From Octopus sinensis (Eukaryota), in assembly GCF_006345805.1 (NCBI RefSeq), contig NC_042998.1, forward strand, positions 49,972,001 through 50,036,000: a stretch of DNA of 64,000 nt. Direction: 5' to 3'. Shown here in pieces: positions 3,720 to 38,682 of the stretch. The position numbers were made by a program, and so were the translations under genes. Each line of letters begins with the position of its first letter. Position 1 is the first letter of the stretch. The notes under the pieces were generated by a model that saw only the letters and a program-made list of their open reading frames with translations, was not told where the DNA came from and ran no database searches.

Positions 3720-4100
3720 AAATTTTAGCACTAGTTTTAGGTGAGGGATAAGTCGATTACATCGACCCTAGTGTTCAAATAATATTTCTTTTATCAAACC
3801 CGAAAGGATTAAAGGCAAAGTCGACCTCGGCGGAATTTGAACTCAGAACGTAGCGGAACACGAAATACCTATTTCTTTACTACCCACAAGAGGCTAAACA
3901 CTGAGGAGACAAACAGGGACAGACAGACGGATTAAGTCGATTACATCGACCCCAATGCGTAACTGGTACTTATTTAATCGACCCCGAAAGTATGAAAGGC
4001 AAAGTCGACCTCGGCGGAATTTCGAACACAGAACGTAACGGCAGGCGAAATACGGCTACGGATTTCGCCCGGTGTGCTAACGTTTCTGCCAGCTGTCCGC
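3720..4100 (-). mobile_element. S1 SINE dimer
   Basis: Two bodies with the GAAATAGGTATTTCG junction at 3861-3880. Confidence 0.8.
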
Positions 4101-4132
4101 CGTGCACACACGTACCCCCTCCCACACGCACG

Positions 4133-4171
<39 letters not shown>

Positions 4172-4830
4172 TAACAGGAGACAATATTGCTAATATTTAT
4201 ATGCTGAATGTTCCCGAAACACATATTCGGTGAAAAGTAAAAGTTAATAATAGTAAAAATTAATATTGGTGTGTATTGCCCTTTTGGGAAGCGGTAGTTC
4301 CATGAGAAAGCATTTCCAAATGTTTATTGGTTTTTGTAGACATTCAGGAAATTTAGCTGCCACCTAAGTTGTCCAGCGTACCATAAAGCAACTATTAAGA
4401 AATCTGTATTGTTAGGATATACGCTATATTCCCGACAAATTTCAATTAGTGTTCAACCAGGTGGTATGAAGACTGTCCGTCCAGTCAAGGCATGGCATAT
4501 TTATACTGTTGTTATAGTTTTATTATAGTTTTACTTTATCATTCTGCAGCTGAATAGAAGATGCTGAAAGAGGCTACGAGAATGTTGTTTATACGGAAGT
4601 CAGCGATGATCGAGCAAGCCTATGATAAAAGACGTTCCAGTCATGACCATTACGTATGACATAACGTTTATGAAGTTAATAAAGTGTTATTTGAGGGAGA
4701 AATGGTTTTTTTTCTAGCAAGCTGAGGTACAACTCTTTGAGTTTATTAATGAAATGTATTGGAGATGGTTGAAAGGTGACATTGATAAGTTCATAAGAGA
4801 TGCGTTTCCTTTATATTTCACCTGATACAT

Positions 4831-5227
4831 GTTTCTTTATTAGCCACGCAGGGCTGAACACAGAGGGGACACATTACAAAATAGAGCTTTTCTTTTTGGG
4901 GAGAAAAAAAAGGAAAAAGAAAAAAGGGGAGTAAGTTTTCGATCAAAAGGGATCGTAAAAAGGAGAGAGAGAGAAGTGGGGAGAGAGAGGTGGAGAGTGG
5001 GAGAAGTGGGGAGAGAGAAGGGGAGAGAGAGAAGTGGAGGGAAAGAGAGGTGGAGAGAGAGAGAGAAGTGGGGAGAGAGAGAGGTGGGGAGAGAGAGAGG
5101 AGAGAGAGAAGTAGAGGGAGAGAGAGAGGTGGAGAGAGTGGGAGAGAGGTGGAGAGAGTCGACTATATCACCCCCAGTTATCAACTGGTACTTATTTTGT
5201 CGACCCCGAAAGAACGAAAGGCAAATG
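4831..5227 (-). mobile_element. Chimeric SINE: S1 central domain + CT-rich tract + Tx1-like LINE 3'UTR tail
   Basis: Minus strand: TTTGCCTTTCGTTCTTTCGGGGTCGACAAAATAAGTACC (S1 body, 5158-5227), then a pyrimidine tract, then TTTACGATCCCTTTTGATCG...AAAAGAAAAGCTCTA...CAGCCCTGCGTGGCTAATAAAGAAAC, matching 18945-19082. Confidence 0.75.
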
Positions 5228-5853
5228 TAAGTACTGGGATCGATTCATTCGAAAAAAAATTCTTCAATGCAAGGCCCCAAACATGGCTGCAGTCTAATGA
5301 CGCAAACAAGTAAAAGATAGTAGATGTGACTGTGTGGTAAGAAGCTTGCTTTCCATTTACATGGTTCCGGGTTCAGTTCCACTGCGTGACACCTTGGGCA
5401 AGTGTCTTCTATTTTAGCTTCAGGCGGGCTAAATTTTTGTAAGTGGATTGGGTAGACGGAAACTGAAAGAAGCCCGGTGTATATATGTGTGTGTGTTTGT
5501 GTCTATCTTCGGCAAAAGAACCCGATAGAATAAGTAATGGGATTAAATAACAAGTGTGGGGTCGATTTGTTCGACTAAAACCCTTCAAGGCGGTGCTCCA
5601 GCATGGCTGCAGTCAAATGACTGAAACAAATAAAACAATTATATAAACATATAAAGAACACACAGACACACACATACGTGCAAACACACACACGTGCAAA
5701 AACACACACACGAACACATACACACATAAACATACAATTCTGTACCATAGTGGATAACAGACGCTCAAGGTGACATGAAATGTGACTGAAGCACGAACCA
5801 TGTGGTCGGGAAGCAAGTTTCATAATACAGTCTCACCTTCGCCTATATATATG

Positions 5854-5886
<33 letters not shown>

Positions 5887-6605
5887 CATATATATATATA
5901 TGTATATATATAGTATATATGTAATGTATGTGTATATATATCACGTGACCGACCAGGCTATCACATGTTGCTACAATCCCTGGTCACAATGCGCTTCGCA
6001 TTGTTTTCGCCTTCAAATGACGCCACCCCGCTGGCTAAGCGAGCAGTCCAATATATATATATATATATTATATATATATAATATAGTATATATATATATA
6101 TAATATATATATATATATGCGTTTGCAGACACATTATACATATCAACCAATCATTTATACACTTTCATGTACAGAAAAAACAATAAAACACACACGTTCT
6201 ATATACACCCGACATAAGACATTTAAGACGATGCATAGAAATACAGAGAAAACAACATGTTAACACTCATAACATGAACGTAAAAAATTCTTAGATACTC
6301 TTGAATTTCTGCCAGAAGAGATTTCTTCAGAATTTGGAAAAGCAAAACTTGATTCTCAAGAACTCACGAGAGGGAATTACTAGACACTGTCATCAACTTC
6401 TAAAATGTCTCTAGATGATAAGTACTGATTTCTTGAAATATAATTAAAGAATGTATATATGAATTTCAATTCACTTAGTATTGTTTACTAATGTTATTCA
6501 GTAAATCACAAGCTACTTCAATTATCTACACTATCCATTGGCTGGCTTCAGTTCTTTCTTTTCTCCTGCTAATTTTTGACATACGTACGTATATACATAC
6601 ATACA

Positions 6606-9874: not shown

Positions 9875-9974
9875 NNNNNNNNNNNNNNNNNNNNNNNNNN
9901 NNNNNNNNNNNNNNNNNNNNNNNNNNNNNNNNNNNNNNNNNNNNNNNNNNNNNNNNNNNNNNNNNNNNNNNNNN
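9875..9974. other. Assembly gap (100 N)
   Basis: Run of N. Confidence 1.
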
Positions 9975-16580: not shown

Positions 16581-16654
<74 letters not shown>

Positions 16655-17055
16655 GTGACCAAGGTTACCGTGGTCTTTTTCGTAGGCTTTTCTTCCCACG
16701 GATAAACCTTACTTGCTTTCCCCTTTACACCATATATCATAACACTGTGATACACGATCCCTATTGATCGTTCTTTTTTTTTTCCTCTTCCCCTTTTTTC
16801 CCCTTTTTTCTTCTTTTTTCATTTCTCTTTCCTTTTGTTCCTTTTCCTTTTCTTTTTTTTCTTTTTATTCTTTTTATTTTAATCAATTTTTTTTGTTTTT
16901 GTTCTTTTCTTCCCTTTTACGATCCCTCTTGATCAAAAACCTACGCCACCCACTTTTTTTTCTTTTGTTTTTTGTTCTCTTCATCCTCCAAAAGAAAAGC
17001 TCTACCTTGTAACTTGTCCCATCTGTGTGCAGCCCTGTGTGGCCAATAAAGAAAC
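16655..17055 (+). mobile_element. 3'UTR-only copy of the same Tx1-like LINE
   Basis: TGACCAAGGTTACCGTGG...AATAAAGAAAC aligns to 18772-19082. Preceded by (TATC)n 16581-16654 and followed by (TATC)n 17056-17155. Confidence 0.85.
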
Positions 17056-17155
<100 letters not shown>

Positions 17156-18697
17156 GGACATCTATCGAGACCTTTCGACATTGCACGTTCGGTCCGTCAG
17201 GGATGCCCCCTCTCGGCGCTTCTATACGTATTGACTCTTGAGCCACTACTGCGGAAGCTGGCGACTCTAAGGGGCATCCCGCGAGAATTGGGATGCGGGA
17301 CGAGCGTGTCTGCATACGCGGACGACGTCACCGTCATAGTGTCTAGCCACGAACACATCGAGCTGGTCGGCGAGACACTGAAAAACTACGAAGCGGTGAC
17401 AGGAGCGAAAATCAACCGGGAAAAGTCAGTGGGCTTGCGACTAGGCACCTGGAGAAGCAAGCCCATGCCGTCCACCAGCGCCTCCGTCGTGGGACGCTGA
17501 CCGACGGCCCGTTGAGTTGCTCGGGGTCTGGTTTGGTCCGGACCTCCAAGTGGAGAAGAACTGGAACGAGATAACGAGTAGGGTGGTCACTCTCGCCCGG
17601 CAATGGGCCGAGAGGAAACTGTCCCTAAAAGGTCGAGCGGAGGTGGCGAACACGTACATCGCGTCCGTCATCTACTACCGCCTGACCGTCGTACATTGTC
17701 CCGACCCTACCATCACCAAACTACAACCATTCTCTTTCGTTCTTGTGGAAAGGATGCGTCCCGATGGTCAGGCGATCCATTTGCTGTCAACACCACGTTT
17801 AAAGGAGGGGCTGGGCATGCCGTGGTTGATGATGCGCAGACACGCGCTGAGACTGCGACATCTCTGGCTCTATGTAGACGACGGTGAACAGGTGTGGTCG
17901 CCGTTTGTGAGGCACGCTTTCCCGCAGCTCGTCTCCATGACCGAACTGCAGTCGTGGATCAAAAAGAGGCCGAGGAAGGGCGAATGGCACCGCGAGTGTC
18001 GCGTTGCTCTCAAGCAACTCTGCCGTCCTGGGTCGACCTTAAGTGACTTCAACACAACCAAAGCATTCTATAGGGGTTTAGTGGAGGGGAGGTACGACGA
18101 CGAGCTCGGGGCGAACCTGGACGTCGACGAGGAGTACCTGACCCGCCTGTTCAGGACGACTTTCGGGCCAGGGCCCATGGACAACTTCCAGAGATCCCTG
18201 GCCTGGCAGTGCTACCGAGAAGCGCTACCCGTTCGGGATAAGCTCTACAGACACGGCTCGAGAAACACGGGGCCGACCTGCCCGAGATGCGGTCAGAGCG
18301 ACGAAACCGTTCTGCACGCACTCGTTCAGTGTCCAACAATTTCCGACCTGTGGGCTTATGTCGAACAACTGCTGTCACGTGTGGGACGAGTCGGTTTATC
18401 AGCTGAGTCTATCGTCAATATTGTCACGCCTCCTTCCTTCAAACGGAAGGAAGAGCTATTTTCATCATCCTTGTGGCTATGGCGAAAGAATGTATCTGGT
18501 GGACGCGTCTGAAAGGATTGGAGACAAACACTTTCCTCTCTGGTCAATCTCTCATCAACTTCTTCAAGTACCACTTGAAAAGGAAAGTGAGAGTAGAGAG
18601 GCAAGTTTTGTCTAGCGAATGTTTTAAAAAAAGATGGGTGAATGTAGCAAGAATGGCACGTATGAATGACGAAGCCACCTTGAGCATAATCCTATGA
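17156..18697 (+). pseudogene. Frameshifted ORF2 remnant (RT C-terminal half, thumb, CCHC zinc finger)
   Basis: Stitched from ORFs 17027..17500, 17517..18512 and 18473..18697. Frameshifts near 17498-17512, 17725-17810 and ~18455; the alternative frames restore FLWKGCVPMVRRSICCQH and AMAKECIWWTRL. Confidence 0.85.
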
Positions 18698-19082
18698 ACC
18701 CAGAAATTGAAAACAGAGATTTGCTTATTTGCAAAAAAAAAAAAAAAAAAAAATAATAAATGTGACTTCATTGACCGAGGTTACCGTGGTCTTTTCCGTA
18801 GGCTTTTCTTTCCACGGTAACCTCACCTGTCCTCCCCTTTACACTTCATATTGACATTTCTGTGATAACGATCCCTATTGATCAATTTTTTTTTTTTTCT
18901 TTTTCCTCTACCCCTTTTTTTAACTCCCCCTTTTTTGTCCTCTTTCTCTCCTTTTACGATCCCTTTTGATCGAAACTCCCCCCCTTTCCTTTTTCTTTTT
19001 TTTTTTTTAAACCTTCAAAAGAAAAGCTCTACCTTGTAATTTGTTCTATCTGTGTGCAGCCCTGTGTGGCTAATAAAGAAAC
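17156..19082 (+). mobile_element. 5'-truncated non-LTR retrotransposon (LINE), L1/Tx1 clade
   Basis: Starts mid-RT (GHLSRPFDIARSVRQGCPLSALLYVLTLEPLLRKL...SAYADDVTVIV), then thumb region, zf-RVT-like motif ALPVRDKL...CPRCGQSDETVLHALVQC and stop at 18695-18697. A ~385-nt pyrimidine-rich 3'UTR ends AATAAAGAAAC. Flanked on both sides by (TATC)n. Confidence 0.9.
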
Positions 19083-19109
19083 ATATCTATCTATCTATCT
19101 ATCTATATA

Positions 19110-19161
<52 letters not shown>

Positions 19162-19195
19162 CCTATCTACTTATCTATCTATCTATTGATGTATG

Positions 19196-20165: not shown

Positions 20166-21061
20166 ATATATATATATAGATATATATGTTGTGTTTTTTG
20201 TGCTTTCTTGTTTGGATTAACTTTATATAGATATATACATACATAGATACGAATATATATACGTGTATGTATAGCTGTATATATGTATATATATATATGT
20301 GTGTGTTTATATGCATGTATATATGTATATATATATATATATAGTATGCATTGAATACACACACACAAACACGCACACATGCATACACACACACACACAC
20401 ACATAATGTATGTGTTGGAGAGACGAAAAGGGAAAACGAGTGTGGGGAATTTCTTCTTACAGATTCTTTGATTTATGATTTGAAATGTATATTGTGAAAA
20501 TTATTAAATATAGCTTTAAACAAACTGTTCTGTTTTAAATTTATTGACTTAAATAATGAATAAAAATAAAGCTGATGTAAATAAATAAATGTATAGCACC
20601 GCACCAAGAGAAAAAAAAAGCGAAGTATGTATCACACGATGAGTAATATTCGGAATAAATTATTGTAGTAGGAACTAGACATAACTTGCATGTATGTATG
20701 TATTTGTTTTGGCAGAGTACAATATCATATATATATATATATAGATATATATATATATATATATATATGAATACATAAACACACATATCAATGTATGTGT
20801 ATACATGTATTGGCAGAAGACAATATATGTACACTCACATACACACATACACGCACAAACTGAACTGGCAAAAAGAAAAAGTTCAGAGCTTCTGCAAACA
20901 GTTTGAATAAGCTACCTCCGTCGAAAATTCAAATTTCACTGTCAACAAATTATGATAAATATGAACATCACCAGTGGAAGGTCATAGAAAGCCATGAAGT
21001 ATAAACTTTCTTTATAACTGCTTGGTGTGAAATTTACATAGGTAGTTGGGGTGATATATTC

Positions 21062-21860
21062 TTTTCTACTCTAAGGCACATAGGCACGAAAGTATTGTGG
21101 AGCGGGCCAGTCGATTACATCGACCCCATTACGCAACTGGTACTTAATTTATCGACACCGAAAAGGTGAAAGGCAAAGTCGACCTCAGCGGAATTTGAAC
21201 TCAGTACGTAAAGACAAATCAAATACAGCTAAACATTTCGCCCGGCGTGTTAACGTTTCTTATTTCTTTACTGACCACAAGGGGCTAAACACAGAGAGGA
21301 CAAACAAGGACAGACAAACGGATTAAGTCGATTATATCGACCCCAGTGCGTAACTGGTACTTATTTAATCGACCCCGAAAGGATGAAAGGCAAAGGCGAC
21401 GCCGGCAGAATTTGAACTCAGAACGTAGCGGCAGACGAAATACCTATTTCTTTACTACCCACAAGAGGCTAAACACAGAGAGAACAAATAAGGACAGAGA
21501 GACGGATTAAGTCGATTATATCGACCCAAATGCGTAACTGGTATTTATTTAATCGACCCCGAAAGGATGAAAGGCAAAGTCGACCTCGGCGGAATTTGAG
21601 CTCAGAACGTAGCGGCAGACGAAATACCTATTTGTTTACTACCCACAACGGGCTAAACACAGAGGAGACAAACAAGGACAGACAGACGGATTAAGTCGAT
21701 TAGATCGACCCCAGTGCACAACCGGTACTTAATTTATCGACCCCGAAACGATGAAAAGCAAGTCGACCTCGGTGGAATTTGAACTCAGAACGTAACGGCA
21801 GACGAAATACGGCTATGCATTTCGCCAAGCGTGATAACGGTTCTGCCAGCTCGCCTCCTT
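21062..21860 (-). mobile_element. S1 SINE head-to-tail tetramer
   Basis: One complete head, four bodies, three A-type tails and a terminal B-type tail. Flanking GGGGTGATATA direct repeat at 21048-21058 and 21866-21876. Confidence 0.85.
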
Positions 21861-22786
21861 AACTGGGGGTGATATAATGTTAGGAGAGAATGACTTTTAA
21901 AAATATATTCTTTGTTATACATTTCTCACCTCTTCTACCCAGAGAGTTCGTATTCGTTATTTTTATCTTTACATTAAAAAGCGAACGTACTCTAGAAAGC
22001 CTTACATACAAATTGTCCATGAGAGAATATAGCTTCACTTCTCTTCATTTTCTTCCATTGTGACTATGTCGTTAAAATTATTGCAATTATGTTGAAAGAG
22101 GCTAGTGTATAATAAACTCTCAAACAATATCAACAATCTGAAAACATCAAAGACAGAAATTATGTATCATATTATGATGCTAGAGCGAGCAGACTTTATT
22201 ACTAAAAACTTTGACAAATACTACTCTATATTCGTATGAGAGAATCGTGCATGTGACTGGACCTGAAGGCTTGAAACCACCGATTCAGAGAACAAAGTAC
22301 GTTAGTAAGTATAGTGGCTATGTCATTCCTTGGTATGTAAGTATATATGTGTATATAAAGCATATATATCCTTCTTTGATGAACAACGTTAATAATATTC
22401 ATTATTAAAGAATTACGTGTAAAATATATTGTGTCATCAACGATCTTCCATACGCACAGTGTGAAGTTGATGACCGAAACTAAATAACGTTGTACAATGG
22501 ACAGTATGTTTTTTGAATCACATAGTCAATGTTTGTCGCTCTGATGTATTTAATATACAAGCTGAATTAAATGTATGTATGTATGTATGTATGTATGTAT
22601 GTATGTATGTATGTAGTGAGAGAAAGGAACGTGAGCTATAAAAGCAATTTGTTGATGCACCTCATAAGGCTGTGAACGGTAAAGTTTATCTGAACGTTAA
22701 AATTGTTGCGCACTCTATCTATCTATATCTATCTATCATCTATCTATCTATCTATCTATCTATGCATACATACATACATACATACA

Positions 22787-31124: not shown

Positions 31125-31820
31125 TTCAAATTCTGGTACAGCACCAACAGTTTTAGGGAGGGAGTAAGTCGATTTCAATGACTCCAGTGTTCGACTGGAA
31201 CGCTATTTTATCGATCTCGAAAGGTTGGAAGCCAAAGTCGACCCTGGCGGAATTTGAACTCAGAACGTTAAGTAGGAAGAAATGCTCCTATTTTGTCTCA
31301 CGCTCCAACGGTTCTTCAGCTCGCCGCCTTAAAATAATGGAAAATAACCCTTTCTACAAAGGGCACAAGGCCTGAAATTTGGTGGGAGGTAGGCAATCAA
31401 TTAGATGTAACCCAGTATGCAACTATATATACTTATTTTATCGACCCCGAAGAATGAAAGGCAATGTCGACCCCAGCGGCATTTGAACTCAGAACGTAAA
31501 GACAAACGAAATACCGCTAAACACTTCGCCCGGCGTGTTAACGTTTCTACCAGGATGAAAAGCAAACTCGACCTTGGCAAAATTTGAACTGAGAACGTAA
31601 AAACGGACGAAATACCTATTTCTTTACTTCCCACAAGGGGCTAAACACAGAGAGGATAAACAAGGACAGACAGTGTGTAACTGGTACTTATTTAATCGAC
31701 CCCGAAAGGATGAAAGGCAAAGTCGACCTCGGCGGAATTTGAACTCAGAGCGTAACGGCAGACGAATTACGGCTACGCATTTCGCCCGGCGTGCTAACGT
31801 TTCTGCCTACTCTCCGCCTT
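31125..31820 (-). mobile_element. Cluster of S1 SINEs (monomer plus multimer)
   Basis: Repeated S1 bodies and B boxes; fixed junction at ~31610-31625. Confidence 0.8.
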
Positions 31821-33449
31821 AATAGAAAATAATATCGATGCAAGATAGAACAGGTTATTCTATAACGACATTATTCGACTTTCAACAAGTCGCTCAGTTG
31901 GATAGAGGTAGCAACTAAATCACAATTAAATTATACACCAACGTTTTAAAAACCAGAGGAACGCATTGACTGATCTAGTCCAAGACATACCATTGCTTAG
32001 ACGCAAAAAGATGGGATAGTCACAACTGATACATTTTTGAATCATGCTTGCGTTCGATAATTGCTGACCTGGCTGGGATGGAACAATAACATGACGCAAT
32101 CTATTTTTTCCTGGCAACTCGCAATGCTTATTGATTCCAATATTACGATATTTCTAAAGTTATGATATATATATATATATATATATCTATGTATGTATAT
32201 TTTATTCGCTTTTATTTTATTTTATTTTGCTCCATATTACTAAATCACTCATGTTATCTAAGAAGCATGTTAAGAGATGTTTCAAATAAATATGGTGCTT
32301 CGTTTAATCCTTTCTGATAATCCAGATGTATTATCTGATACCATTGAAATATCTTTCATATCATGGAAAACAGATATTAATTCAATACTTCCAAAATATC
32401 AGCAAAGAATATTTTCAGTAGATGATTTTTTTTTCTTCTTTATTCTAATATATCATCAGAGTAACATATTTTCAATACCAGTGAAGTATGTTCTTTTATT
32501 TTTATTATCATATTGCTGCTCCTATTATTTTCAATATCACTATATTATTTCTGATATCACTGAAATAATTCGATTATCTTTCAAAGAACCCCCCCCCCCC
32601 CAAAAAAAGCGAAAGACTTGGTTACGTTCTTTAAAACTCACACTTGCGCGCGAACATATATTCAATGAACGTGGCAGCCAGTGAAATATAGTGTGGCTCA
32701 AAATAATCACTCGATCTACTGGAAAAAGCAACCAAATTGCATACTTCTGCTTTATATAAAGTGTAGTACAGACTGATATAATCCTGAAAAATATATAAAT
32801 AAAGGAAATAAGACGGCTCGGACGCCTTTGATCATAGATCTGTTCACGCAGGGCTGATCGGGGACAAAGCAACAATCAGAACAATATACACATACATATA
32901 TACAATCAGACAGACATATAGACGCACACATTGTTCTTTAGAATCAAAAGTCACCTCTGGCAGTCAAAAACAATTTGCTGATTCTCACCAGTATATAAAA
33001 AAAATTAAAGAAGTATTGGTTAAAATCCAACAATGATGTGGTGTAACGTTAACAGTAACAACAACAAGAACAACAGCCACAATAACAACACTAAAAGCTC
33101 ATTATAATCATCTTTATCAGGAACATGGTCGTCGTTATCGTCGTCGTCGTCGTCGTCATGGCCATCGTCATCAGTATTACCGCCACCAACATCACAACCA
33201 CCGCCATCTTGATCTCTACTATCGCAATCACCATCATATTTTATCTCTATTACCACCTCCTCTGTCCTCACACCGTCATGAAACGCTATTACCATTGATG
33301 TAGCGTCAATATAATCATGGAAAGTAAATAATTACACGAGAGGGTTTTTTTTTTTGTTTTTTGTTTTGCAAAAAATATTTTTGTAACAAATGCAACTGAA
33401 AAATATGTTTCCTTTTCCGAGAAAGAACGTGTGTACGAGAGAGAGAGAG

Positions 33450-36775: not shown

Positions 36776-37817
36776 TATAATTTAGGTTATTCAAATTCCA
36801 ATACAGGGACTTTTTTTCATTATGAGCGTTGGGCAAAACGCCTTGCAGTATTTCTTTCGACAATTTACGTTCTGATTTCAAATTCCACCGAGAATATCCC
36901 TCTGAGAATGAGAAAATAGTTTTACACACGTACTGGGATCGATGGTATGAATTACCTGTTCCCGCTCAAAGTTTCGGTCTTGTTCCTACATCAAAAGGCA
37001 TCAATTTAACGATTTTAATTGTCTTCGATTTCCTGTTTGAAGCGTAACACTCAAGCACATCGTGACAAGCAGAATAATTATTATGTATTCTCACGTATGA
37101 AATATTTACCCCACAACCACCCCACTGTCATGTAAATTTTTGCTCCTCTTATCCTCTCCCTGCTCCTAGTGTGTAAAAAATTTGCCCCCGGTTGAGTATC
37201 ACTGATTTACGTAGACCTCAATATCCAACAGCGTCAGTCACGGTCATTTGTTTCTTCCTATCAGCCTCCTCTCTCTGGTGCTTCCTACTTTTCCGCCTCC
37301 TCATCCAGTATCACCATCACCCTTTATCACCTCCTTCAGTACGTCTTCTTCCATCTCCTACGCTACCGCTCCCTCATCTTCTGTCACGTCTTCCCCAGCA
37401 TCGTCTTATAACAACCACTAATTTCTACCTTCGCCTAAATAATGAGGTCTGCTTGTCTCCCGTTTCTGTCTCCAAATTAAAAATGGACACGGCTATCTTT
37501 AAACTGATTTACTTTTAGATTTAAGTAACTAAATATCTTTTATTTATTTTATTTATCGATTGGTTTCTACTTTAAATGATGTTTGTAGAAGATGAGAGAG
37601 GAAGATACAGGCAGTTTAATTTTTGTCGATTTCTTTCTTATTTACATTATTTTGAATTTAATGGTTTATTTTTGTAAACAAACATGTATTTGATGATGTC
37701 GCTTGCGTGGTCGTTACTGACGGTGAAGTAGTTTACTCTCGCTTCAATCCTGTTGAAGCTCACCGATGATTATAGGCGCTCCAGCTATGACACCCTCATC
37801 ATTAAATTTCAGACAGA

Positions 37818-38395
37818 TTCTTTTCTACTCTAGGCACAAGGCCCGAAATTTTGGGGAAGGGGGCCAGTCGATTAGATCGACTCCAGTACGCAACTGGTAC
37901 TTAATTTATTCACCTCGAAATGATGAAGGGCAAAGTCGACCATGGCTGAATTTGAACTCAACGTAATGATAGACGAAATACTTATTTCTTTACTACCCAC
38001 AAGGGGCTAAACATAGAGTGGACAAACAAGGACAGACAAACGGATTAAGTCGATTACATCGACCCCAGTGCGTAACTGGTACTTAATTTATTCACCTCGA
38101 AAGGATGAAGGGCAAAGTCGACCTTGGCTGAATTTGAACTCAACGTAATGATAGACGAAATACTTATTTCTTTACTACCCACAAGGGCTAAACATAGAGG
38201 GGACAAACAAGGACAGACATAGGTATTAAGTCGATTACATCGACCCCAGTGCGTAACTGGTACTTAATTTATCGACCTCGATAGGATGAAAGGCAAAGTC
38301 GACCTCGGTGGAATTTGAACTCACAACGTAACGGCAGACGAAATACCGCTAAGCATTTCGCCCGGCGTGCTAACGTTTCTGCCAGCTGGCCGCCT
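37818..38395 (-). mobile_element. S1 SINE trimer
   Basis: Three bodies joined at GAAATAAGTATTTCG junctions; terminal B-type tail. Confidence 0.85.
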
Positions 38396-38682
38396 TTTCA
38401 GGCAGATTATGGAGGGTATATCAGACGAAACGTTGTGGTAATAACAAACAAGACGAGGACAAATATCCGCCAAATGTAAATAATGTAAATAATGTACATA
38501 ATTCCTCATCTCTTAAATATAGAACCAGATTATCAAGGTTTACAACCTCCAGTTTGAATTTTCTTTTTATTTCATTTTTTTCTCGTTCAAGACAATAAAG
38601 GTTAAATGATTTAGCTGTTGTTTCTAACGGGTTGAACAAGCGATCAGAATCAACTCTGTTTAGTAGTTGCTTATCTCCAAAG

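What the first reader, a model, noticed from the sequence alone, without database searches (positions are those of the whole stretch)
4831..5227. Missing-link chimera: S1 SINE body fused to ~140 nt of the LINE 3'UTR
Seen on the minus strand: S1 central domain, then a CT-rich tract, then TTTACGATCCCTTTTGATCG...AAGAAAAGCTCTA...CAGCCCTGCGTGGCTAATAAAGAAAC, matching 18945-19082. The tail is intermediate between the LINE and standard S1 tails. The 3' flank ATGTATC resembles the ATCTATC target. Inference: a SINE subfamily with a longer LINE-derived tail, or an RT template switch between SINE and LINE RNAs. Either supports the partnership.
Basis: partly seen in the sequence, partly recalled or inferred. 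Interest (0 to 1): 0.7.

Follow-up and report, generated by a model that had tools for sequence, protein, structure and literature searches.

The report
Headless SINE fragment joined to LINE tail
A decayed piece of a short repeat (SINE) sits directly against the last 145 bases of a long repeat (LINE) in a very repeat-dense octopod genome, and nothing found here shows it is more than a one-off junction, so it is probably ordinary.

Summary
On the minus strand, 5225-5146 is an S1-type SINE body fragment, 5158-4962 is a CT-rich minisatellite, and 4975-4831 is the last ~145 nt of the LINE 3'UTR. That last piece is 82% identical to 18940-19084 (E 1.6e-30) and 80% identical to 16902-17055.

The "missing link" reading is not supported:
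- **No promoter head.** The SINE piece starts at about S1 position 100.
- **Wrong body type.** It is closest to the type-C variant of S1, which normally carries a different tail. It is not closest to type A, the variant that shares the LINE tail.
- **The join lies inside the CT tract.** The first ~12 nt of the tract align to the type-C tail start, and the last ~12 nt align to the LINE's own T/C-rich tract.
- **No insertion hallmarks.** There is no target-site duplication and no displaced SINE tail downstream.
- **No second copy** in the window.
- **The tail is LINE-type.** It matches the LINE at 10 diagnostic sites and S1-A at 2. Both S1-A-like states also occur in an Argonauta hians LINE tail, so they reflect LINE subfamily variation.

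The best reading is a single dead composite, joined by microhomology in the CT tract during one LINE integration. That could be an RT template switch or 5'-end joining with a small target deletion. A multi-copy subfamily cannot be excluded, because no octopod genome could be searched here.

The parts
4831..4975 (-). 5'-truncated LINE copy: the last ~145 nt of the LINE 3'UTR, ending ...GGCTAATAAAGAAAC at 4831
   Evidence: 82% identity to 18940-19084 and 80% to 16902-17055. Three-way alignment A1.
4940..4955 (-). LINE 3'UTR hairpin 2 (CGATC-CCTTTT-GATCG), intact in this copy
   Evidence: Predicted in all three window copies. The stem covaries among LINE relatives, with 3 of 4 pairs showing compensatory changes.
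4842..4855 (-). Terminal stem-loop AGCC-CTGCGT-GGCT, just upstream of the AATAAAGAAAC end
   Evidence: Consensus fold. The tail is LINE-type at 10 diagnostic sites and S1-A-type at 2.
4962..5158 (-). CT-rich minisatellite (period 16/30) that contains the fusion point
   Evidence: TRF. The first ~12 nt align to type-C SINE tail starts. The last ~12 nt align to the LINE T/C-rich tract 1.
5146..5225 (-). Headless fragment of an S1-superfamily SINE, type-C-like (S1 positions ~100-180, including the CT-rich start of the type-C tail)
   Evidence: BLAST to S1 copies. 87% identity to the type-C consensus against 83% to A and B.
4800..4830 (-). 3' flank (ATGTATCAGGTGAAAT...): no TSD partner and no SINE tail remnant
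   Evidence: No 7-mer of the first 25 nt recurs within 840 nt upstream. Local alignment of the downstream 100 nt to A, B and C tails is no better than shuffles.
5235..5322 (+). 5'-truncated 3' end of a second SINE family (S2), antisense to the S1 piece and meeting it head to head
5323..5640 (+). Near full-length S2 SINE directly following the S2 fragment
   Evidence: S2 positions 15-177 and 278-399 match 5326-5488 and 5508-5635.
16656..17055 (+). Reference LINE copy b: 3'UTR-only 5'-truncated copy, flanked by (ATCT)n on both sides
17160..19082 (+). Reference LINE copy a: 5'-truncated and frameshifted (RVT_1, zf-RVT), 3'UTR ~18698-19082, flanked by (ATCT)n

Best explanation
This is a single, dead, decayed composite locus, not a functional SINE. 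On present evidence it is not a SINE subfamily.

**Shown.** A headless fragment of a type-C S1-like SINE runs through its own CT-rich tail start into a ~200-nt CT minisatellite. The far end of that minisatellite is the LINE 3'UTR's own T/C-rich tract, followed by the last 145 nt of the LINE. The fusion point therefore lies inside a CT-rich tract that both parents possess. The remaining ~35 nt of the SINE's own tail are absent.

**Inferred mechanism.** The join was made during one LINE retrotransposition event, by microhomology in that tract. Two routes are possible:
- (a) the reverse transcriptase copied the LINE RNA 3' end and then switched to a SINE RNA; or
- (b) the 5' end of a truncated LINE cDNA was joined into the CT tract of a resident SINE, with loss of a few tens of bases of target.

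The CT tract expanded afterwards by slippage. The locus cannot be transcribed as a SINE because it lacks the Pol III head, so it does not propagate.
For: - **Parts in one orientation.** LINE tail homology has E 1.6e-30.
- **Native junctions on both sides.** Alignment to type-C copies continues past CGACT into CTCTCCACCTC. LINE homology continues about 12 nt into the CT tract.
- **Body type.** It is type-C-like, and type-C copies normally end in a different tail.
- **Simple nesting fails.** There is no TSD for the LINE piece or for the whole composite, and no displaced SINE tail downstream.
- **Truncated LINE copies are the norm here.** The other two are cut at ~400 nt and ~1.9 kb.
- **Dense background.** S1-like blocks cover 9% of the window in 26 blocks. 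SINEs make up about 11.6% and LINEs about 12.9% of the Octopus vulgaris genome (PMC13282606). Close LINE/SINE contacts are therefore expected often.
- **No second copy** of the junction in the window.
Against: - One copy cannot separate RNA-level from DNA-level joining.
- Known template-switch chimeras usually keep the acceptor RNA's intact 3' end and have one TSD pair. Neither is seen here.
- The 5' end of the SINE piece abuts an antisense S2 fragment, head to head, and this model does not explain that.
- Uniqueness was tested only in 64 kb. No octopod genome was searchable.
Confidence: 0.5

Rival explanations
1. Post-insertional DNA-level fusion. A type-C SINE and a longer 5'-truncated LINE fragment lay side by side in the same orientation. 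Replication slippage or unequal crossing-over between their CT-rich tracts then deleted what lay between them: the SINE tail remainder, any spacer, and the upstream LINE 3'UTR.
For: - The CT tract is visibly unstable, a ~200-nt minisatellite of period 16/30.
- Both parents carry CT or T/C-rich tracts at the right places.
- DNA-level recombination between SINE units occurs in this window. In the array at 38396-37815, unit 2 has the 5' half of unit 3 (B type) and the 3' half of unit 1 (A type).
- Same-orientation adjacency within 200 nt is expected for about 4% of LINE tails. This is my estimate from the block count.
Against: It needs two independent insertions plus a deletion. There is no residual TSD of either parent and no direct trace of the deleted material.
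Confidence: 0.2
2. One reading: a member of a genuine multi-copy SINE subfamily whose tail is a long (>=145 nt) piece of the LINE 3'UTR, here as a 5'-truncated copy.
For: - The S1 body occurs with at least three different tails in the window, so tail exchange has happened repeatedly in this superfamily.
- Tail exchange by template switching or recombination is the accepted model for mollusc SINEs (PMC4824008; PMC4758252; PMC11481361).
- The copy keeps both LINE 3'UTR hairpins.
- 5' truncation and the absence of a TSD between the parts fit retroposition of a chimeric master.
Against: - There is no second copy among 26 S1-like blocks and 3 LINE tails.
- The copy has no head and no flanking TSD.
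- A 200-nt unstable minisatellite inside a master element is unlikely.
- Reported mollusc SINE/LINE tail homologies span 35-61 bp (PMC11481361).
Confidence: 0.15
3. Simple nested insertion: a LINE 3' fragment inserted into an S1 copy with its own TSD, leaving the rest of the SINE downstream.
For: It is the commonest way two repeats come to abut. Repeat density is high.
Against: There is no TSD. No A, B or C tail remnant lies within 100 nt downstream of the LINE end, with scores at or below shuffles.
Confidence: 0.03
4. Assembly artefact: two reads or contigs wrongly joined through the low-complexity CT tract.
For: A 200-nt low-complexity tract is a classic place for misjoins.
Against: The only N run is at 9875-9974. 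Both ends of the tract grade into their neighbours, which looks biological. No read data were available to test this.
Confidence: 0.05
5. A 5'-truncated copy of a LINE subfamily whose 3'UTR itself contains an S1-like core.
For: LINE parts can contribute to SINE bodies (Kojima 2018, PMC5786205).
Against: None of the six LINE 3'UTRs examined contains the S1 core. These are two in the window, plus L001, L003, L014 and L015.
Confidence: 0.03

Closest known systems
Tail-sharing ('stringent') tRNA-derived SINE/LINE pairs (Ohshima et al. 1996, Mol Cell Biol 16:3756; Ohshima & Okada 2005; both cited in the reference list seen)
   Same: The standard S1 type A shares its last ~50 nt, its terminal stem-loop and its AATAAAGAAA end with this LINE family. 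The locus carries a bona fide LINE 3' end.
   Different: This copy carries 145 nt of LINE rather than about 50. It has no Pol III head, no TSD and no second copy. Its body is of the type that normally carries another tail.
Chimeric retrocopies made by LINE RT template switching (Buzdin et al. 2003, Nucleic Acids Res 31:4385, cited)
   Same: Two different RNAs are represented in one orientation. The LINE part is at the 3' end, and no TSD lies between the parts.
   Different: In the classical cases the 5' partner keeps its intact 3' end and one TSD pair flanks the whole. Here the SINE's own last ~35 nt are missing and no TSD is found.
Mosaic or 'jigsaw' evolution and tail exchange of mollusc SINEs (PMC4758252, PMC4824008, PMC11481361, PMC5786205)
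   Same: The same conserved body occurs with several LINE-derived tails (types A, B and C). Template switching and non-allelic recombination are both proposed as mechanisms.
   Different: Those papers describe multi-copy families. This is a single degraded locus.
5'-truncated LINE insertions resolved by microhomology, sometimes with target-site deletion (known for mammalian L1; from my own knowledge, not tested here)
   Same: The LINE piece is 5'-truncated. Its junction lies in a tract of shared composition, there is no TSD, and adjacent target sequence is missing.
   Different: The LINE clade here is unassigned (RVT_1 + zf-RVT only). Its integration behaviour is unknown.
Octopus tRNA-derived SINEs OK, OR1 and OR2 (Ohshima & Okada 1994; OR1/OR2 counted as CORE-SINEs)
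   Same: The host is an octopod. The best named relative of the LINE protein is from Argonauta hians. Both SINE families here have tRNA-like heads by eye and conserved central segments.
   Different: I could not compare S1 or S2 with the published consensus sequences, so the equation is a lead from memory. ARAGORN and Rfam report nothing.

Membership tests
Functional tRNA-derived SINE with LINE-derived tail | Internal Pol III promoter head (tRNA-like, A and B boxes) at the 5' end | tested here: not met
   S1 homology begins at about position 100 (5225). Upstream lies antisense S2 sequence, and no S1 head is found up to 6400.
Functional tRNA-derived SINE with LINE-derived tail | 3' tail homologous to the 3' end of a partner LINE | tested here: met
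   82% over 148 nt to the LINE 3'UTR end.
Functional tRNA-derived SINE with LINE-derived tail | Target-site duplication flanking the element | tested here: not met
   No 7-mer of the 25-nt 3' flank occurs within 840 nt upstream. Standard S1-A copies show 13-20 nt TSDs.
Functional tRNA-derived SINE with LINE-derived tail | Many dispersed copies with the same module order | tested here: inconclusive
   There is no other copy in 64 kb. External scans returned only chance hits, but those collections hold almost no octopod DNA.
Template-switch chimeric retrocopy | Two RNA-derived parts in the same orientation, with the LINE 3' end at the 3' side | tested here: met
Template-switch chimeric retrocopy | The 5' partner joined at or near its own intact 3' end | tested here: not met
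   The ~35 nt remainder of the type-C tail is absent.
Template-switch chimeric retrocopy | A single TSD pair around the whole chimera | tested here: not met
5'-truncated LINE copy | Colinear with the LINE up to its exact 3' terminus, with a variable 5' cut | tested here: met
   It ends at ...AATAAAGAAAC exactly as copies a and b do. The other copies are truncated at ~400 nt and ~1.9 kb.
5'-truncated LINE copy | TSD, or a documented target deletion, at the insertion site | tested here: inconclusive
   There is no TSD. A target deletion can be shown only with an orthologous empty site, which is not available.

The most novel reading that the evidence does not exclude
The locus is a 5'-truncated member of an undescribed, multi-copy octopod SINE lineage. 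In that lineage a type-C conserved body swapped its usual tail for at least 145 nt of this LINE's 3'UTR, including the covarying CCTWTT-loop hairpin. That would be a SINE tail exchange preserved at an early stage, before the tail was trimmed to the ~50 nt seen in type A.
Probability: 0.12. Interest if true: 0.45.

Novelty: already known. Interest (0 to 1): 0.15.

Why it matters
If the junction proved to be multi-copy, it would show how a SINE captures a new LINE tail and how much of the LINE 3'UTR is taken at first. That would be a modest but concrete addition to the tail-exchange model for mollusc SINEs. As it stands, it is one degraded junction in a genome where SINEs and LINEs each make up more than a tenth of the DNA. 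Its main value is as a caution: adjacency of two repeats in one orientation is not evidence of a partnership. The S1-A/LINE tail homology, which is real, does not depend on this locus.

Tried and rejected
1. **External searches for more copies.** I scanned for the hairpin-2 motif TTTACGATCCCTYTTGATC.
   - Viral contigs gave 0 hits.
   - Metagenome contigs gave 7 hits, and none showed any similarity to the LINE 3'UTR or the composite beyond the ~20-nt motif itself (L006 gave no BLAST hit at all).
   - Genome contigs gave 3 bacterial hits, judged chance from their record titles and not checked for extension.
   - These collections hold almost no octopod DNA. The LINE C-terminal protein found only 15 relatives, none above 84% identity.
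2. **Identifying the source genome.** Exact look-up of two window ORFs found nothing on record.
3. **A second protein search with the junction-spanning ORF (4840-5184).** Not run. The query is mostly low-complexity, and one search shows the database lacks this species.
4. **TSD search** for the LINE piece alone and for the whole composite. None found.
5. **Remnant of any S1 tail type downstream of the LINE end.** None found.
6. **The rest of the S1 element beyond the S2 insertions (5640-6400).** Absent.
7. **The 17-mer TAACTGGGGGTGATATA,** shared with 21860-21876. I tested whether it marks a second member of the same sub-subfamily. The reconstructed empty site of the array there shows no further S1 or composite similarity. 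Left unexplained.
8. **Rfam and ARAGORN** gave no hits for the SINE heads.
9. **Covariation in the three window LINE tails.** Uninformative with only three sequences.
10. **LINE clade.** Only RVT_1 and zf-RVT could be shown. Clade left unassigned.

Full report
**What the window is.** The sequence is AT-rich and packed with short interspersed repeats and microsatellites. A 5'-truncated LINE lies at 17160-19082(+). It encodes the end of a reverse transcriptase (RVT_1) and a zf-RVT zinc-binding domain and carries frameshifts. By comparison with a related contig, its ORF ends near 18697, so the 3'UTR is about 18698-19082. The best named relative of the protein is from the octopod Argonauta hians at 61% identity. 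Closer unnamed relatives sit on short metagenome contigs. I treat the host as an octopod. A species name would come only from memory, so I give none.

**Checking the observation.** Read on the minus strand, the region is as described.
- 4829-4973 aligns to 18940-19084 at 82.4% over 148 nt (E 1.6e-30). It also aligns to a second, 3'UTR-only LINE copy at 16902-17055, at 80% (E 2e-24).
- Between the two lies a CT-rich minisatellite, 4962-5158, of period 16/30.
- The LINE piece keeps both predicted 3'UTR stem-loops and ends at exactly the same ...AATAAAGAAAC as the two LINE copies.

**What the SINE piece is.** It covers only S1 positions ~100-180. The tRNA-like head is missing. Upstream, in SINE sense, the sequence is an antisense 5'-truncated 3' end of a second SINE family, S2 (5235-5322, + strand), followed by a near full-length S2 (5323-5640). 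No S1 head appears beyond them.

The S1 body occurs in this window with at least three different tails:
- **Type A** is the standard S1. Its last ~50 nt resemble the LINE end.
- **Type B** ends ...TAGAGTAGAAAAGAAT.
- **Type C** has a CT-rich start followed by ...AAAATTTGAAACCAAT.

The fragment here is closest to the type-C consensus, at 87% against 83% for A and B. It has the type-C states AAAATAA and GTTGA. Its alignment to type-C copies also continues past CGACT into the first ~12 nt of the CT tract: CTCTCCACCTC against TTTCCCCACCTC or TCTCCCCTC. So the body-to-CT-tract junction is simply the native start of a type-C tail.

**Where the fusion is.** At the other end, LINE homology extends about 12 nt into the CT tract. 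Both LINE copies have a variable T/C-rich tract immediately before TTTTACGATCCC. The join between SINE-derived and LINE-derived sequence therefore lies somewhere inside a CT-rich tract that both parents possess. About 35 nt of type-C tail are missing on one side. The upstream LINE 3'UTR, including hairpin 1, is missing on the other.

**Hallmarks of insertion.**
- No 7-mer from the first 25 nt of the 3' flank recurs in the 840 nt upstream. So there is no TSD for the LINE piece alone or for the composite. Standard S1-A copies and S1 arrays in the same window do show clear 13-20-nt TSDs.
- The 100 nt downstream contain no remnant of an A, B or C tail, with scores no better than shuffles.

But so is the clean signature of a retroposed chimera.

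**Is the tail 'intermediate'?** Over the last 49 aligned columns:
- 31 columns are the same in the two LINE copies, this tail and the S1-A consensus.
- At 10 columns this tail agrees with the two LINE copies against S1-A.
- At 2 columns it agrees with S1-A against the LINE copies.
- 2 columns are private changes in this tail, and 4 differ between the two LINE copies.

Both S1-A-like states also occur in the tail of a bona fide LINE of Argonauta hians, one that is contiguous with its ORF. The S1-A state CTTGTGG is shared by the Argonauta LINE and by a LINE on a metagenome contig. This tail shares CTGYGTGG with the window's LINE copies. So its tail is a LINE tail from a slightly different LINE lineage, not a step towards S1-A. 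S1-A probably took its tail from another subfamily of this LINE family.

**Is the junction repeated?** Not in the window. 26 S1-like blocks (9% of the sequence) and three LINE tails yield this one junction. Scans of the viral, metagenome and prokaryote-genome collections with a 19-nt hairpin-2 motif gave nothing useful. The metagenome hits showed no similarity beyond the motif, and the three genome hits were bacterial by title. Those collections contain almost no octopod DNA, and the window's own ORFs are not on record. Genome-wide uniqueness is therefore untested.

With this repeat density, I estimate that about 4% of LINE tails would have a same-orientation S1-like block within 200 nt by chance. 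SINEs and LINEs make up 11.6% and 12.9% of the Octopus vulgaris genome (PMC13282606).

**Mechanism.** Three facts are shown:
- The two parents lie in the same orientation.
- They are joined inside a shared CT-rich tract.
- The join has neither a TSD nor a displaced SINE tail.

My preferred reading (confidence 0.5) is inferred from these. The join was made during one LINE integration through microhomology in the CT tract. Either the RT switched from LINE RNA to SINE RNA, or a truncated LINE cDNA was joined into a resident SINE with a small target deletion. The tract expanded later.

The rivals are:
- a later DNA-level deletion between two neighbouring CT tracts (0.2), made plausible by a hybrid SINE unit in the array at 38396-37815;
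- a true multi-copy subfamily (0.15);
- a misassembly (0.05);
- simple nesting (0.03);
- a LINE subfamily with an S1-like core in its 3'UTR (0.03).

The head-to-head contact with the S2 fragment is unexplained under all of these.

**Comparison with what is known.** Tail sharing between SINEs and LINEs, tail exchange, template-switch chimeras and mosaic mollusc SINEs are all established. This locus fails the defining tests for a functional SINE, having no head, no TSD and no copies. It also fails two of three tests for a classical template-switch chimera. It passes the test for a 5'-truncated LINE copy.

**Verdict.** This is a real but ordinary repeat mosaic of low interest. The more interesting material lies in the surroundings: single-TSD heterotypic SINE arrays and a covarying LINE 3'UTR hairpin. 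These are listed under things noticed in passing.

Noticed in passing
window 21058-21862(-), 37815-38396(-), 3733-4101(-), 31362-31822(-): S1 SINEs form head-to-tail arrays with a recurrent junction AAAGAAATA|GGTATTTCGTC (S1 position 53). In three of these arrays the 3'-most unit carries a type B tail, and in the array at 3733-4101 a type C tail, while the upstream units are type A. Two arrays are flanked by a single TSD pair: ATATCACCCC(C)A, and AATCTG[C/T]CTGAAA. That fits single insertion events with RT jumping from a B or C SINE RNA to the 3' end of type-A RNAs. It resembles the TSD1-(SINE)n-TSD1 architecture reported for bivalve SINEs (PMC11481361).
   Followed up: partly
window 37815-38396(-): In this array, unit 2 has a 5' half almost identical to unit 3 (B type) and a 3' half identical to unit 1 (A type). 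It looks like a hybrid made by unequal crossing-over within the shared core, so tails can also be swapped at the DNA level.
   Followed up: partly
window, S1-like copies listed: One conserved SINE body carries at least three unrelated tails (A, B and C), implying several LINE partners. Only the partner family of type A is visible in the window.
   Followed up: partly
window 18869-18884, 18955-18970, 16751-16768, 16921-16936, 4940-4955; L001:1106-1122; L003:11058-11073; L014 ~1618-1634; L015 ~1618-1632: The LINE 3'UTR holds a short hairpin with a conserved loop (CCTWTT). It is duplicated in the window's LINE. Its stem differs between LINE relatives (GATC/GATC, CCTC/GAGG, CCCC/GGGG), and 3 of 4 pairs show compensatory changes. 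It is a candidate RT-recognition element.
   Followed up: partly
window 16581-19190: Both LINE copies sit in one (ATCT)n microsatellite cluster, with the repeat on both sides of each copy. At least ten other (ATCT)n arrays in the window have no LINE. This could be target preference or a LINE-borne tail, and it is undecided. The Argonauta LINE tail is followed by (ATT)n instead.
   Followed up: partly
L003:11138-11189 (Argonauta hians) and L014:1722-1764: Tails of related LINEs resemble the S1-A tail (CCCCTCT..TGTTT..CTTGTGG) more than the window's own LINE copies do. The donor of the S1-A tail is therefore probably another subfamily of this LINE family. S1-like SINEs and tail arrays also occur in the Argonauta locus.
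   Followed up: partly
window 5164-5180(-) and 21860-21876(+): An exact 17-mer, TAACTGGGGGTGATATA, is shared between the SINE fragment and the head-side TSD copy of the S1 array at 21862. The reconstructed empty site shows no further similarity. Unexplained.
   Followed up: yes
window 5226-5322: The 5'-truncated end of the S1 fragment meets the 5'-truncated end of an antisense S2 fragment, a head-to-head geometry like twin priming. S1 and S2 also share a short core-like segment, TCGATAnAnTAAGTACnAG (p ~0.001 against shuffles).
   Followed up: partly
P0005: A protein closely related to this octopod LINE is deposited as a 'zinc-binding domain-containing protein' of a Herbaspirillum sp. MAG. Several others sit on short metagenome contigs. 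These are probably cephalopod DNA carried into metagenome bins.
   Followed up: no
window 9875-9974: A run of 100 N (an assembly gap). It is far from the finding.
   Followed up: no
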